Under the pieces are notes generated by a model. That model was not told where the DNA came from. It made no database searches and saw only the letters and a program-made list of their open reading frames with translations. The position numbers were made by a program, and so were the translations under genes. Of a stretch of 64,000 nt of DNA, positions 17,739 through 58,610 are shown piece by piece; position 1 is the stretch's first letter; each line of letters opens with the position of its first letter. The DNA is from Macrostomum lignano (taxonomy: Eukaryota), in NCBI GenBank assembly GCA_002269645.1, contig NIVC01001474.1:165807-229806 (forward strand). Direction: 5' to 3'.

Positions 17739-18953
17739 TCAAACAATCAATCTATCAAAAAACAGATCAATCCATCGATCAATCTCACTGTCGCACTCTC
17801 CGCCGCTATTATCCAACTCCGAGTCCCACCGCTCCCAGGAGTCCAGTGCGCACTCGGACTCCGCATCGTCAACCCCGGGAACGAAGGCCCAGCCGCGCCG
17901 GGTTCGAGTCTCGTCTGAGGCCCGCAGGCGGAGCAGGTGAACCCGGCCTGGGTAGGCGGACTGGAGTGACAGATCAGGGAGACTGAGGTCATCCTTCACA
18001 AGCTCTAATTATCACTTTAGTAATGAAAATGACTTATAGCAATCAAAATATCCTTAGCAACTAGGAATTATCGTAACAACTGGGAATAACCCTAGCAACC
18101 AGGAATAGACATTGCAACCCCTGAATATCCCTAGCAAACCGGAAATACACTAGCAACCGGGAGTAACCCTAGCAACCGGGAAATAGCCATAGCAACTGGG
18201 AATAACCCTAGCAACCGGGAATAACCTTAGCAACCGGGAATAACCCTAGCAACCGTAAATAACCCAGCAACCAGGAATAACCCTAGCAACCGAGAATAAC
18301 CCTAGCAACCGGGAATGACGCTAGCAACCGGGAATAACTTTAGCAACCGGGAATAGCCATAGAAACCGGGAATGACCCTAGCAACCGGGAATAGCCATAG
18401 AAACCGGGAATGACCCTAGCAACCGGGAATAGCCAGAGCAACCGGGAATAACTCTAGCAACCGGGTATAACATTAGCTACAAAGAAAAGAATCGCTACTT
18501 TGGAAAAAAGCAAATCCTTATCAAACCCTAGAAACCGTAGACACACTCAAAAACAGTCAGTCAGGACAATACCCTCACCAGAAAGTATTGGATATCGCTA
18601 GGCCTGCGTACATCTGACACCACCCAGAGCCCGTCAGGAGGCGGTTGCGCCATCTGCACCGCCAGCCGGCAGAAGCAGCCAGGATCGGCAGCTCGCAGCC
18701 GCTCACCCCAGGCGATCATGTCAGCCCTGAAGGCCTCCTTGTACTCTGTGGAATCCGCCAGTCGGTCTGCATCGAGTTGGTGCAGCCTGGCGTACTCCGC
18801 CTTCAGCGGCTGGCTGACTCGAACGCAAGCGGCTGGAAAGTTGCGCTCAGCCGCGGCGGCTAATATTCGAGAGGTCACGTGATCTTTGCCGGATTTGCGC
18901 TTGCCGGAGATCAGCAGCAGCTGGCGAGGCTTGGGACTGCAGTTTGAGGCCGA
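17739..18953 (-). CDS. PMVK: Phosphomevalonate kinase (animal type), 2 exons; start Met not genomically encoded
   Basis: Exons 18953-18579 and 17960-17739 (phase 0, gtgagg...tccag). LLLISGKRKSGKD, YKEAFRADMIAWGE, WVVSDVRR, RGWAFVPGVDDAESECALD. No in-frame ATG before the P-loop. Confidence 0.92.
18050..18480. repeat. 19-20-bp minisatellite with CCCTAGCAAC core (PMVK intron)
   Basis: Unit aaccctagcaaccgggaat. Confidence 0.9.
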
Positions 18954-18972
18954 CTGCGGTTGAGATGAAAGC
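18954..18972 (-). promoter_or_regulatory. Putative trans-splice acceptor of PMVK
   Basis: Minus strand ...gctttcatctcaaccgcag|TCG GCC TCA AAC; pyrimidine tract plus CAG in phase 0 with the ORF. Confidence 0.6.
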
Positions 18973-19082
18973 GGTGGGACGAATCCAGTTAATATCCTGT
19001 ACACACACTCGGGCTTTGGAGTGGCACTTGGCGCAGATGCTTAACCTTCTTGAGGATGATATATGTATGAGGGAATAAAAGA

Positions 19083-56100: not shown

Positions 56101-58589
56101 CATTACAAATCCCGGATCCCTGATACCATTACAAATCCCGAATCCCTGATACCATTACAAATCCCGAATCCCTGATCCCATTATATGAATTCCTGATCCG
56201 ATTATCCGAATCCCTGATCCCATTATCCGAATCCCTGATCCCATTATCCGAATCCCTGATCTCATTATCCGAATCCCTGATCCCATCATTTGAATCCCTG
56301 ATCCCATTAGCTGAATCCCTGATTCCATTACCTGAATCATTGATCCCATTTACCTGAATCATTGATCCCATTACCTGAATCCCTGATCCCATTACCTGAA
56401 TCCCTGATCCTATTACCTGAATCCCTGATCCTATTACCTGAATCCCTGATCCCATTACCTGAATCCCTGATCCCATTACCCGAATCCCTGATCTTATTAC
56501 CTGAATCCCTGATCCCATTACCTGAATCCTTGATCCCATTACCTGAATCCCTGATCCCATCATCTGAATCCCTGATCACATTACGTGAATCCCTGATCCC
56601 ATCATCTGAATCCCTGATCCCATTAGCTGAATCCCTGATCCCATTACCTGAATCCCTGATCCCATCATCTGAATCCCTGATCCCATCAACTGAATCCCTG
56701 ATCCCATTATCTGAATCCCTGATCCCATCAACTGAATCCCTGATCCCATTATCTGAATCCCTGATCCCATCAACTGAATCCCTGATCCCATCATCTGAAT
56801 CTGATCCCATTACCTGAATCTCTGATCCCATCATCTGAATCCCTGATCCCATCATCTGAATCCCTGATCCCATCATATGAATCCCTGATCCCATCATCTG
56901 AATCCCTGATCCCATCATCTGAATCCCTGATCCCATCATCTGAATCCCTGATCCCATTACGTGAATCCCTGGTCCCATTATAGACTCTGATCCCACATCT
57001 CACAGCTAAAACCCAGACCCACTCCAAACCAGCTCACCACAGTGACAAAGCCGTCCAGACAGACCAAACTCTCGAGCTGCTCATCCAACCAAAACAAAGC
57101 CGCAATGGGCCCCGGCTCAGCCAATCCAGTTGTCTCCAGCAGCACGTGATCAAATCGACCTCGACGCTCCATCAGCCGTTCAATCGCGGCAACACCAGCA
57201 TGTTTCAACGAGCAGCAGAGGCAGCCATTGCCCAGCTCCAGCCATTCTTCGTAGCGCTTCTGACCATCGCTAGAGTTCTTGCTGTCGCCTGAACGGATTG
57301 TGAGTGAGTAGCTAGTTGATAATTATTGACTTTAGATCACACCCCAGGTCTCACCTCATCGATCTAATGGCTCAGTCACAGTCACAACGCTAAACAAAGC
57401 AGCACTGTAGATGGGATTTTTGGGATAATATAGGCAAAAGATTCCTTCAGATAGGATTTGGGGGGGATTTTAGGCAAAAGATCCCTTCAGATGGGATTTG
57501 GGGGAATTTTAGGCAAAAGATCCCTTCAGATGGGATTTTAAGAAATTTTAGGCAAAATATTGCTTCAGATGGGATTTAGGGGGATTTTAGGCGAAAGATC
57601 CATTCAGATGGGATTTAGGGGGATTTTAGGCAAAATATCCCTTCAGATGGGATTTTAAGAAATTTTAGGCAAAATATTCCTTCAGATGGGATTTGGGGGG
57701 ATTTTAGGGAAAATATTCATTCCGTTGGGATTTTACGTTTTACGATTCCAAAGAGTCGTATCTGTAGAATCACTGAGTTGCGTCTAAAGCGCATCTGCGT
57801 CACGTCACTTTATGAATTATAATCGCCTTTCACATTTATAACAACTCTATTTTGTCTACTTGAGTTAGTAGTTTTTTCGCAACTCTTACGATCCTGCAAC
57901 TCACGTGATGCGCTCGTGACTCAACAGTCGCCTCTCTGTTACATTACAGTCGTTTTGAGTTGTTAAAAAAAGTCACAGGAGTCACCCAAGAGTCGCTAGA
58001 GTCACTTGTGAGTTGTTTGCAATGACTCTAAGTAATAGTAATTCTAGTGGCCCATCGCGGCGCTCTGATGTGCCAGCATAAAGTGCAGTCACATCAATTT
58101 GAGGCTAAATTGAAATCTCAGCTTGCCTCTGCTCGTGCAATTAACGGCCTTGAAGGCCAACCCCTAAGGCACTTTAAAGTGTACATGCCTAACGATAAAT
58201 AATGTTAGGGCCGCTGTGTGTGTGTGCCTGTGTGTATGACCGCATAGATATTTGCATGGTACGTAAGACTCTCAAAAATTACCTGTCTGATTGTCCTCAG
58301 CAACAGTGAGAGCCGCCTCAACAGCGGCAGAGTCGCCAAATTCGTTCATAATTACAGCAATCCGTCTGCCGTGCTGCTCAGTGAGAATGTAGTTCAACAA
58401 AGTAGTCTTGCCAGCTCCCAGGTAGCCAGTGATCACTGTGACAGGCACTGGAGGCAGATCAGTGACTGCAGGCTCAGCATTGGCTAAGCTACTACTGGGT
58501 ATTTCATCCAGACTCACCAGATCTGGACAATCTTCATCATCATCTTGAGCAGCTTTAGTGGCACTGTTAAGATTCTCTGGCTGATTCAT
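50122..58589 (-). CDS. ZNG1: Zn-regulated GTPase metallochaperone ZNG1 / COBW domain protein (COG0523), 4 exons, ~413 aa
   Basis: Exons 58589-58283, 57288-57038, 55868-55407, 50343-50122. CPDLV motif, Walker A ITGYLGAGKTT, NEFG, WLELGNGCLCCS, LETTGLAEPGP, SKTDL, LRTK|GLL, VQGVYELF, RIVFIGQKL. The last exon was missed by the ORF track and sits behind a 5.06-kb intron. Confidence 0.93.
50508..54585. repeat. 23-bp satellite, ~4.1 kb, with a 1518-bp higher-order repeat (ZNG1 intron 3)
   Basis: Unit ctgaatagacaggtgagagtcca with variants; five identical ORF pairs are offset by exactly 1518 bp (66 x 23). Confidence 0.97.
54590..55385. repeat. 20-22-bp minisatellite (ZNG1 intron 3, donor end)
   Basis: Unit gagttcacataataagacac(ac). 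Confidence 0.92.
55905..56985. repeat. 21-bp minisatellite (ZNG1 intron 2)
   Basis: Unit tgaatccctgatccca(ttacc/tcatc). Confidence 0.95.
57408..57720. repeat. 39-bp minisatellite (ZNG1 intron 1)
   Basis: Unit ggcaaaatatcccttcagatgggatttagggggatttta. Confidence 0.88.
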
Positions 58590-58610
58590 TTCTCTGTCAC
58601 TGTCCCCCAG

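What the first reader, a model, noticed from the sequence alone, without database searches (positions are those of the whole stretch)
17739..58610. Nine co-oriented genes over 41 kb: candidate polycistronic (operon) cluster
Seen: ZNG1, DALRD3, PRELID3, ZnF, MICU1, DGAT1-like, SIRT6, SMYD4 and PMVK are all on the minus strand with 0.7-3.1-kb gaps largely filled by minisatellites. Most have a clear acceptor shortly 5' of, or replacing, the start codon. A run of nine same-strand genes has probability (1/2)^8, about 0.4%, under random orientation. Established: SL-resolved operons occur in nematodes, tunicates and flatworms. Inference: one or a few operons; a CpG-rich patch at ~31.95-32.4 kb could be an internal promoter for DGAT1-like > SIRT6 > SMYD4 > PMVK.
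Basis: partly seen in the sequence, partly recalled or inferred. Interest (0 to 1): 0.7.

Follow-up and report, generated by a model that had tools for sequence, protein, structure and literature searches.

The report
Known flatworm operon cluster, repeat-swollen

Summary
The window is Macrostomum lignano assembly Mlig_3_7, contig NIVC01001474.1 (window coordinate + 165,806). All nine genes lie on the minus strand at the stated coordinates. I rebuilt seven GenBank proteins of this contig exactly from window coordinates.

This flatworm has a 35-nt spliced leader ending in ATG. About 15% of its genes are reported to lie in operons whose spacers are inflated by repeats.

GenBank locus tags carry the name of the RNA-seq transcriptional unit:
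- ZNG1, PRELID3, ZnF and MICU1 share one unit on a paralogous contig.
- SIRT6, SMYD4 and PMVK share another.
- The membrane-protein gene between them always has its own unit.

Five genes have annotated coding regions that begin on the first base after an AG acceptor. SIRT6, PMVK and the membrane protein have no start codon of their own there, so the leader's ATG supplies it.

ZNG1 and DALRD3 are joined by cis-splicing from a donor that overlaps the ZNG1 stop codon. One GenBank model is an 806-aa in-frame fusion.

- "DGAT1-like" is an orphan membrane protein.
- The "CpG-rich patch" is not distinctive.
- Orientation alone is weak evidence.

Verdict: two or three polycistronic units, of an already known kind.

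The parts
50122..58610 (-). ZNG1 (CobW-type GTPase), 413 aa. Exons 58589-58283, 57288-57038, 55868-55407, 50343-50122. The transcript starts at 58610, right after TTTCAG. Intron 3 (5063 nt) is almost entirely minisatellite.
   Evidence: Pfam cobW 8e-48 and CobW_C. The model equals GenBank P0137/PAA67572.1, whose CDS starts at 58610.
50120..50125 (-). Consensus splice donor GTGAGT overlapping the ZNG1 stop codon (TGA at 50124-50122). Splicing here skips the stop codon.
   Evidence: Sequence. Used in GenBank models P0137 and P0136 and in UniProt models P0121 and P0122.
49374..49611 (-). Three acceptors used with that donor. TTGTAG|A (exon starts 49609) rebuilds a TGA stop. CCCGCAG| (exon starts 49422) and TTCTCAG| (exon starts 49374) are both in frame with DALRD3. 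A fourth AG (exon starts 49412) would put the SL ATG in frame with DALRD3.
   Evidence: The 806-aa fusion CDS that I rebuilt is exactly PAA85774.1.
47728..49422 (-). DALRD3. Exons 49422 (or 49374)-48774 and 48357-47728. Own ATG at 49406. It is not annotated as a separate gene in any of the loci retrieved.
   Evidence: Pfam DALR_1. Models P0121, P0122 and P0136. No AATAAA or ATTAAA between the ZNG1 stop and DALRD3.
45774..46367 (-). PRELID3 (PRELI domain), single exon. Acceptor TTTCAG| with exon start 46367. Own ATG at 46343, in frame with the SL ATG.
   Evidence: Pfam PRELI 1e-27. I predicted that the annotated product would start at the acceptor; a 197-aa product with exactly that sequence is on record.
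41413..43151 (-). C2H2 zinc-finger gene, 386 aa. Exons 43134-42487 and 41925-41413. The intron holds a 23-mer array. Candidate acceptor AAACAG| lies about 18 nt upstream of the ATG.
   Evidence: Equals GenBank P0145/PAA67570.1, Mlig005864g1.
34292..39421 (-). MICU1, 499 aa. Exons 39421-38930, 37275-36970, 36553-36395, 35765-35498, 34566-34292. Intron 1 holds a 1.5-kb array.
   Evidence: Equals GenBank P0151/PAA67569.1, Mlig005864g2, which has the same unit prefix as the ZnF gene.
31343..32600 (-). An older UniProt model joins the ORF to the TM gene; GenBank Mlig_3_7 does not. Status is unclear: a 5' exon, a separate gene, or nothing.
   Evidence: (P0126). CpG o/e is 0.96 in the patch against 0.84 in non-repeat background.
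27392..30299 (-). Exons 30299-29948, 29042-28654, 27739-27392. It starts at GGCAG|ATC and has no ATG of its own there. Alternative acceptor GTCCAG| with exon start 30286.
   Evidence: GenBank P0125, P0123 and P0124, all 'partial'. No Pfam, PDB or remote homologue.
24838..26145 (-). SIRT6, single exon, 435 codons. It starts at CTCCAG|TCG, and no ATG lies between the preceding in-frame stop codon and the conserved N-terminus. The SL ATG supplies Met1.
   Evidence: Residue 1 (S) aligns with residue 2 of six orthologues, MSVNYA....
22071..24018 (-). SMYD4 (SET + MYND), single exon. ATG at 24014. Acceptor AACAG| with exon start 24018.
   Evidence: GenBank P0129.
17739..18953 (-). PMVK, 198 codons. 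Exons 18953-18579 and 17960-17739. It starts at CCGCAG|TCG with no ATG. The SL ATG supplies Met1.
   Evidence: GenBank P0132, Mlig029511g2. Residue 8 aligns with residue 9 of human PMVK 3CH4.
50516..55395 (.). Largest minisatellite block (23-mer x177 plus 22- to 34-mers), inside ZNG1 intron 3. The same intron is only 671 nt in the paralogous contig.
39540..40962 (.). 31-mer x46 array filling 71% of the ZnF>MICU1 spacer. Other spacer arrays: 46922-47648, 44664-45777, 43322-43940, 33045-33781, 30551-31156, 26247-27142, 20325-20816, 19080-19681.

Best explanation
The run is a cluster of two or three spliced-leader (SL) operons of Macrostomum lignano, in this layout:
- Unit A is ZNG1(+DALRD3) > PRELID3 > ZnF > MICU1.
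- Next comes an orphan membrane-protein gene (TM) that has its own unit name.
- Unit C is SIRT6 > SMYD4 > PMVK.

Inferred steps:
- RNA polymerase II starts upstream of ZNG1, and probably again somewhere between MICU1 and SIRT6.
- It reads through several genes, including kilobases of minisatellite.

Steps supported by the annotation and the sequence:
- The precursor is cut into mRNAs by 3'-end formation and by trans-splicing of the 35-nt SL onto an AG acceptor in front of each downstream gene.
- Because the SL ends in AUG, it supplies the start codon of SIRT6, PMVK and TM. It adds 7-8 in-frame residues to ZNG1 and PRELID3.
- Between ZNG1 and DALRD3 the precursor is cis-spliced from a donor overlapping the ZNG1 stop codon. 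This gives either a ZNG1 mRNA with a rebuilt stop codon or an in-frame ZNG1-DALRD3 fusion.
For: Organism and locus. SIRT6 is 98% identical to an M. lignano protein. The window is 100% identical to NIVC01001474.1 over 21.9 kb.

Literature:
- The SL is CGGTCTCTTACTGCGAAGACTCAATTTATTGCATG.
- 30% of genes are trans-spliced and about 15% lie in operons.
- Operon spacers are inflated by repeats, with a mode of about 100 bp after repeat subtraction. The cut-off used was 1 kb and the largest operon had nine genes (PMC8629364).
- Genes cut from one assembled precursor share a name prefix (PMC5730564).

Locus tags:
- Contig 3194: Mlig009362 g4 (ZNG1), g5 (PRELID3), g6 (ZnF), g8 (MICU1); Mlig015824g2 (TM); Mlig002561 g2 (SIRT6), g4 (SMYD4), g5 (PMVK).
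- Window contig: Mlig005864 g1 (ZnF) and g2 (MICU1); Mlig029511g2 (PMVK).
- L002 contig: Mlig029511 g3 (SMYD4) and g4 (PMVK).

Annotated 5'-partial CDS start on the first base after AG for ZNG1, PRELID3, TM, SIRT6 and PMVK. The SIRT6 and PMVK N-termini match orthologues only if the SL ATG is Met1.

ZNG1-DALRD3. The 806-aa fusion I rebuilt is PAA85774.1. The window copy gives a clean 838-aa ORF. There is no AATAAA or ATTAAA between the two genes.

Spacing. TRF-subtracted gaps are below 1 kb for six of eight junctions. All seven annotated genes between window 7739 and 68610 are on one strand. The same gene order is kept in four paralogous contigs.
Against: - No reads were examined here. Co-transcription rests on locus-tag names and on how the authors say they were made.
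- Transcript assemblers can merge neighbouring same-strand genes through read-through or overlapping UTRs.
- Two gaps remain long after tandem-repeat subtraction: MICU1>TM 2649 nt and SMYD4>PMVK 2023 nt. These are measured CDS to CDS, without RepeatMasker.
- In the same species 60% of trans-spliced genes are not in operons, so an acceptor alone does not prove an operon.
- The annotated 5' ends of SMYD4 and MICU1 do not sit on an AG.
- No SL site is annotated for DALRD3.
- Unit names differ between paralogous contigs, which shows that the assemblies break at repeats.
Confidence: 0.68

Rival explanations
1. The whole run, from ZNG1 to PMVK, is one operon of about 41 kb driven by a single promoter upstream of 58610. 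On this reading the breaks in unit names are artefacts of RNA-seq assembly failing across repeat arrays.
For: [quoted passage not shown] Unit boundaries differ between paralogous contigs. TM, SIRT6 and PMVK all need an SL ATG, which fits downstream operon genes. No annotated gene lies in the 10 kb upstream of ZNG1. The published maximum operon size is nine genes.
Against: TM has its own unit prefix in all three named copies. The MICU1>TM gap is the longest after repeat subtraction (2649 nt) and holds an ATG-initiated ORF (31776) that could mark a separate start. Nothing here shows RNA continuity across MICU1>TM or TM>SIRT6.
Confidence: 0.2
2. Each gene has its own promoter and is trans-spliced as a monocistronic transcript (outron removal). 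On this reading the shared unit names and the fused ZNG1-DALRD3 models come from read-through transcription or assembler merging, and the co-orientation is chance or ancestral linkage.
For: 60% of SL-trans-spliced M. lignano genes are not in operons. Spacers of 0.35-2.6 kb after repeat subtraction are long enough to hold promoters; the authors found that 2 kb or less upstream is sufficient for reporters. A nine-gene same-strand run is expected by chance in some windows of a genome-wide scan.
Against: The same unit groupings of unrelated genes recur in independent paralogous loci. The donor overlapping the ZNG1 stop codon is used in four separate models that reach into DALRD3. No canonical poly(A) hexamer separates ZNG1 from DALRD3. 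TM>SIRT6 leaves only about 200-350 nt of unique spacer.
Confidence: 0.12

Closest known systems
Macrostomum lignano SL operons (Wudarski et al. 2017, PMC5730564; Ustyantsev & Berezikov 2021, PMC8629364)
   Same: Same species and same assembly. One 35-nt SL ending in ATG. Same-strand neighbours assembled as one precursor. Spacers inflated by tandem repeats. Conserved housekeeping-type genes. Operon size within the published range (maximum nine).
   Different: Nothing in kind. By the published 1-kb repeat-adjusted rule the run would probably be scored as two or three operons rather than one. I could subtract only tandem repeats, and I measured from coding ends.
C. elegans operons (SL2-resolved; from my own knowledge and as summarised)
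   Same: A polycistronic precursor. Downstream genes receive a spliced leader. Mostly unrelated housekeeping genes. Two to eight genes per operon.
   Different: M. lignano has a single SL type and no dedicated SL2. Raw spacers here are 0.7-4 kb rather than about 100 nt. The SL donates the start codon, which the nematode SLs do not.
Flatworm SL 3'-terminal AUG used as initiator methionine (Cheng et al. 2006, J Biol Chem 281:733, cited in PMC12582326)
   Same: SIRT6, PMVK and the TM protein have no start codon of their own, and their frames open exactly at the acceptor.
   Different: It was shown experimentally for schistosome SL mRNAs. Here it is inferred from sequence and orthologue alignment.
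Chimeric gene models and cis-splicing at polycistron-resolving acceptors in parasitic flatworms (Calvelo et al. 2025, PMC12582326); conjoined or read-through genes of vertebrates (my own knowledge)
   Same: An upstream gene's donor is joined to the first acceptor of the downstream gene. Annotation pipelines then emit a fused model.
   Different: That study reports such cis-splicing at polycistron-resolving sites to be very rare and presumably harmful. Here the donor is a perfect GTGAGT placed on the stop codon, two acceptors keep the frame, and no separate DALRD3 gene is annotated in the loci retrieved. The fusion may therefore be a regular product.

Membership tests
SL trans-splicing operon (M. 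lignano criteria of PMC8629364) | Immediately adjacent genes on the same strand, not interrupted by a gene on the other strand | tested here: met
   GenBank gene calls for window 7739-68610 comprise seven genes, all on the minus strand. SIRT6 and DALRD3 ORFs are also on the minus strand. The long plus-strand ORFs inside the run are antisense to coding exons.
SL trans-splicing operon (M. lignano criteria of PMC8629364) | The downstream gene is SL trans-spliced | tested here: inconclusive
   Indirect but strong for PRELID3, TM, SIRT6 and PMVK. Their annotated 5'-partial CDS start on the first base after AG, and the boundaries derive from SL-read peaks according to the authors. SIRT6 and PMVK need the SL ATG. 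Not shown for DALRD3, ZnF, MICU1 or SMYD4. No reads were examined.
SL trans-splicing operon (M. lignano criteria of PMC8629364) | Repeat-adjusted intergenic distance below 1000 bp | tested here: inconclusive
   With TRF subtraction only, CDS end to next 5' site: 699, 633, 910, 568, 350 and 823 nt pass; 2649 (MICU1>TM) and 2023 (SMYD4>PMVK) fail. These are upper bounds, because UTRs and interspersed repeats were not subtracted.
SL trans-splicing operon (general) | One precursor RNA spans the genes | tested here: met
   At the level of the public annotation only. Unrelated neighbours share transcriptional-unit prefixes: Mlig009362 g4/g5/g6/g8, Mlig002561 g2/g4/g5, Mlig005864 g1/g2 and Mlig029511 g3/g4. 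The run is not shown to be a single unit.
SL trans-splicing operon (general) | A single promoter, with no capped transcription start at downstream genes | not testable with these tools
   Needs RAMPAGE/CAGE, chromatin marks or reporter assays.
C. elegans-type operon | A specialised SL2-type leader and an intercistronic region of about 100 nt | tested here: not met
   A single SL is reported for M. lignano. Raw spacers are 0.7-4 kb.
DGAT1 / MBOAT (for the gene at 27392-30299) | MBOAT domain with a conserved catalytic histidine; similarity to DGAT1 or SOAT | tested here: not met
   No Pfam family at E<=0.1 for the full protein. No PDB sequence hit at E<=10, although DGAT1 and SOAT structures exist. 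Only a self-hit in 1.84 billion representatives.
Conjoined / read-through fusion gene (ZNG1-DALRD3) | The upstream gene's terminal-exon donor is spliced in frame to the downstream gene, skipping the stop codon | tested here: met
   The donor GTGAGT at 50125 overlaps TGA. Acceptors with exon starts 49422 and 49374 keep the frame. The window ORF is 838 aa, and the rebuilt 806-aa paralogue is identical to PAA85774.1. Whether the protein is made was not tested.

The most novel reading that the evidence does not exclude
Two readings are not excluded.

(a) The nine genes form one continuous precursor of about 41 kb, nearly half of it minisatellite. That would equal the largest operon reported for this species.

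(b) ZNG1 and DALRD3 are not resolved by trans-splicing at all. They are routinely cis-spliced through a donor placed on the ZNG1 stop codon, giving a bifunctional 838-aa ZNG1-DALRD3 protein alongside a ZNG1-only isoform. That would be a case of an operon gene pair turning into a fusion gene.
Probability: 0.2. Interest if true: 0.4.

Novelty: already known. Interest (0 to 1): 0.2.

Why it matters
It shows that a reader working from raw sequence alone can recognise an SL operon. The biology, however, is published for this species and this locus is already annotated. The locus is a compact illustration of three known features of M. lignano:
- operons whose spacers and introns are swollen by fast-changing minisatellites;
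- start codons donated by the spliced leader;
- gene models that fuse operon neighbours.

Only the ZNG1-DALRD3 stop-codon-skipping splice might repay a small follow-up. It bears on how cis-splicing and trans-splicing compete on a polycistronic precursor, and on how fusion genes arise from operons.

Tried and rejected
- A chimeric query of all gene products in one homology search returned nothing and cost one of three searches.
- Looking up PRELID3 from its own ATG failed. The product on record starts at the acceptor.
- P0121 has no contig on record.
- A naive search for frame-keeping GT..AG pairs between ORFs was too ambiguous. A splice-site dynamic program preferred spurious multi-intron paths. 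Models were instead fixed by orthologue logic and by the annotated product lengths, then verified by exact look-up.
- A codon-usage score did not separate coding from GC-rich non-coding ORFs.
- Substitution patterns between paralogous copies were too few (about 1.5% divergence) to say whether the ORF at 31776 is under coding constraint.
- CpG enrichment as a promoter mark was rejected. The low window-wide CpG o/e (0.56) comes from the arrays (0.22), while non-repeat DNA is 0.84.
- Poly(A) hexamers are absent from all 21 arrays on both strands, so this says nothing about orientation. In non-repeat non-coding sequence of the run there are 22 on the sense strand against 40 on the antisense strand. 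This is suggestive but confounded by A/T skew.
- No tRNA gene, Rfam family or SL RNA gene is in the window.
- The locus-tag names appear in no searchable paper.
- The 2021 operon paper has no held supplement listing its operons, so I could not check whether this is one of its two nine-gene operons.

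
Full report
**What the window is.** The sequence is eukaryotic, and 43% of it (27.5 kb) is minisatellite arrays. It holds no tRNA gene and no Rfam family. The long SIRT6 reading frame is 98% identical to a Macrostomum lignano protein. A 21.9-kb locus fetched from assembly Mlig_3_7 (GCA_002269645.1), contig NIVC01001474.1, is identical to the window base for base. Window coordinate + 165,806 gives the record coordinate. Three further contigs (NIVC01000305, 01003194, 01005049) carry paralogous copies, 94-97% identical in unique sequence, with the same genes in the same order.

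**Checking the observation.**
- Pfam confirms eight of the nine names.
- I built exon models in the window and checked them by exact look-up. ZNG1, PRELID3, ZnF, MICU1, the membrane protein (TM), SMYD4 and PMVK reproduce the GenBank proteins of this contig residue for residue.
- Both limits of the finding are exact. 17739 ends the PMVK stop codon. 58610 is the first base after the TTTCAG acceptor, where the GenBank ZNG1 CDS begins.
- ZNG1's last exon lies at 50343-50122, beyond a 5-kb intron of minisatellite. The ZNG1>DALRD3 gap is therefore only 699 nt.
The gap to the annotated start of that gene is 3992 nt.
- Arrays make up about 46% of gap sequence, but none of two gaps. They fill introns as well.
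- The 'DGAT1-like' gene encodes a 362-aa multi-pass membrane protein with no Pfam, PDB or remote homologue.
- No plus-strand gene is annotated from window 7739 to 68610.
- The (1/2)^8 argument is correct arithmetic but weak for a genome-wide scan.

**What is known about this organism.**
- M. lignano has one 35-nt spliced leader, CGGTCTCTTACTGCGAAGACTCAATTTATTGCATG.
- About 30% of its genes are trans-spliced and about 15% are assigned to operons.
- Spacers between trans-spliced neighbours are inflated by repeats. After subtracting repeats the modal distance is about 100 bp, and 1 kb was used as the cut-off.
- 75% of operons have two genes, and the largest have nine (PMC8629364).
- The genome annotation was built from RNA-seq 'transcriptional units' that often are precursors holding several genes. 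These were cut into genes at peaks of SL-containing reads and poly(A) reads (PMC5730564).

**Evidence for co-transcription at this locus.** The GenBank locus tags recovered by exact look-up are, in order of transcription:

| Contig | Locus tags |
|---|---|
| 3194 | Mlig009362g4 (ZNG1), g5 (PRELID3), g6 (ZnF), g8 (MICU1); Mlig015824g2 (TM); Mlig002561g2 (SIRT6), g4 (SMYD4), g5 (PMVK) |
| Window contig | Mlig025027g1 (ZNG1); Mlig005864g1 (ZnF), g2 (MICU1); Mlig030436g1 (TM); Mlig029511g2 (PMVK); SMYD4 unnamed in the look-up |
| 5049 (L002) | Mlig029511g3 (SMYD4), g4 (PMVK) |

These proteins are unrelated in sequence. A shared prefix therefore means they were cut from one assembled precursor, or from precursors that cluster with it. 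That gives two multi-gene units, with the TM gene always named apart. This is inference from names plus the authors' stated method. I saw no reads.

**Evidence for trans-splicing.**
- The annotated coding regions are flagged partial and begin on the first base after an AG for five genes: ZNG1 (TTTCAG|), PRELID3 (TTTCAG|), TM (GGCAG|, alternative GTCCAG|), SIRT6 (CTCCAG|) and PMVK (CCGCAG|).
- For PRELID3 I predicted the start from the acceptor before finding that exactly this 197-aa product is on record.
- SIRT6 and PMVK have no ATG between the upstream stop codon and their conserved N-termini.
- With the SL's ATG, SIRT6 reads M-SANYSAGLSEY against MSVNYAAGLSPY in six orthologues. PMVK aligns to human PMVK with a one-residue offset.
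- Use of the flatworm SL AUG as initiator is established (Cheng et al. 2006, cited).
- In some copies the annotated ends lie 1-6 nt downstream of the AG. The ends given for SMYD4 and MICU1 fall just after their genomic ATG without an adjacent AG, which I cannot explain.

**ZNG1 and DALRD3.**
- The ZNG1 frame ends ...GTT TGG TGA GTA. This places a consensus donor GTGAGT on the stop codon.
- Four independent models use that donor:
  - This contig's GenBank ZNG1 splices to TTGTAG|A at 49609, rebuilding TGA.
  - PAA85774.1 on contig 305 splices to CCCGCAG| (exon starts 49422 in window coordinates). The result is an in-frame 806-aa ZNG1-DALRD3 protein, which I rebuilt exactly.
  - Two UniProt models use the acceptor with exon start 49374 or a later one.
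- The window copy gives a clean 838-aa fusion frame.
- No AATAAA or ATTAAA lies between the two genes.
- No separate DALRD3 gene is annotated in the loci retrieved.
- So these two genes are certainly on one transcript model. Whether DALRD3 is also released by trans-splicing is open.
- A 2025 survey of parasitic flatworms treats fused models as signs of operons. It finds cis-splicing at polycistron-resolving acceptors to be very rare.

**Distances and the proposed internal promoter.**
- After subtracting tandem repeats, six junctions are 350-910 nt. MICU1>TM is 2649 nt and SMYD4>PMVK is 2023 nt. These are upper bounds, since UTRs and interspersed repeats are not removed.
- SMYD4 and PMVK share a unit name on contigs 3194 and 5049 (L002); the window-contig SMYD4 is unnamed in the look-up.
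The low window average is caused by the arrays (0.22). The patch is therefore not a distinctive mark.
- A unit break does fall between MICU1 and TM. An ATG-initiated ORF (31776-31343, donor GTTAGT) sits there. An older UniProt model joins it to TM, but Mlig_3_7 does not.

**Conclusion.**
- The run is best read as two or three SL operons of a kind already described for this species and already reflected in the public annotation of this locus.
- A single nine-gene operon cannot be excluded, because assemblies break at repeats.
- Independent promoters for every gene are unlikely, but the tools used here cannot exclude them.
- Novelty is nil in kind. The only detail worth a small follow-up is the stop-codon-skipping ZNG1-DALRD3 splice.

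Noticed in passing
window 36-3395, minus strand: Exons of an AMPK alpha-type kinase (Pkinase 1.6e-51; AMPK_alpha_AID 4e-9) form a tenth co-oriented gene. It lies about 14 kb downstream of PMVK and runs off the window's left end.
   Followed up: partly
window 27392-30299: The 362-aa multi-pass membrane protein has no detectable relative outside Macrostomum: only a self-hit among 1.84 billion representatives. UniProt names an older model of it 'GPI ethanolamine phosphate transferase 3', which I could not substantiate.
   Followed up: yes
window 50516-55395, versus L005 5162-5832: ZNG1 intron 3 is 5063 nt in the window but 671 nt in the paralogous contig. The 23-mer x177 array is essentially absent there. 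TM introns 1 and 2 are about 900 nt here against 213-238 nt in the paralogues. Array sizes differ greatly between copies, or were collapsed during assembly.
   Followed up: partly
window 24015-24837, versus L001 11907-14030: The SIRT6>SMYD4 spacer is 823 nt with only a vestige of a 43-mer repeat in the window. In the paralogous contigs it holds a 2.1-kb array of about 50 copies.
   Followed up: yes
window 24985-25078, inside the SIRT6 coding region: An in-frame 33-nt tandem repeat (STERTLE... motif) lies in the C-terminal tail. The window copy is 435 codons against 456 in the paralogues. SIRT6 is not among the GenBank genes of this contig.
   Followed up: partly
window 10950-11878: A perfect (AGTC)n microsatellite: 232 copies, 929 nt, 100% matches.
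   Followed up: no
window 8573-10320, both strands: A GC-rich stretch (about 51% GC) has overlapping low-complexity ORFs on both strands, including a 252-aa Pro/Gln/His-rich plus-strand ORF at 9562-10317. No GenBank gene is annotated there.
   Followed up: partly
window 24011 and 39415: The GenBank 5'-partial CDS of SMYD4 and MICU1 begin 3 and 6 nt after the first base of their genomic ATG, not after an AG. Other annotated 5' ends lie 1-6 nt downstream of their acceptors. This is probably imprecise peak calling, but that is not shown.
   Followed up: partly
window 14953-15156, minus strand: A UniProt PMVK model (P0133, A0A1I8FTB8) splices the PMVK last exon to an ORF 2.7 kb downstream on the same strand. 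This hints that transcripts continue past PMVK.
   Followed up: no
window 17739-58610: None of the 21 arrays (18.8 kb) contains AATAAA or ATTAAA on the sense strand, and only one hexamer occurs on the antisense strand. In non-repeat non-coding sequence of the run the hexamers number 22 on the sense strand against 40 on the antisense strand. The flanks show 18 vs 20 and 24 vs 14 (minus vs plus strand).
   Followed up: partly
L005 around 2290 (window about 58495): The paralogous ZNG1 copy on contig 305 has a 1-nt deletion in exon 1. This is why its GenBank CDS starts 32 codons into the protein. The copy on contig 3194 is truncated by a frameshift (265 aa). These may be assembly indels or decaying paralogues.
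   Followed up: no
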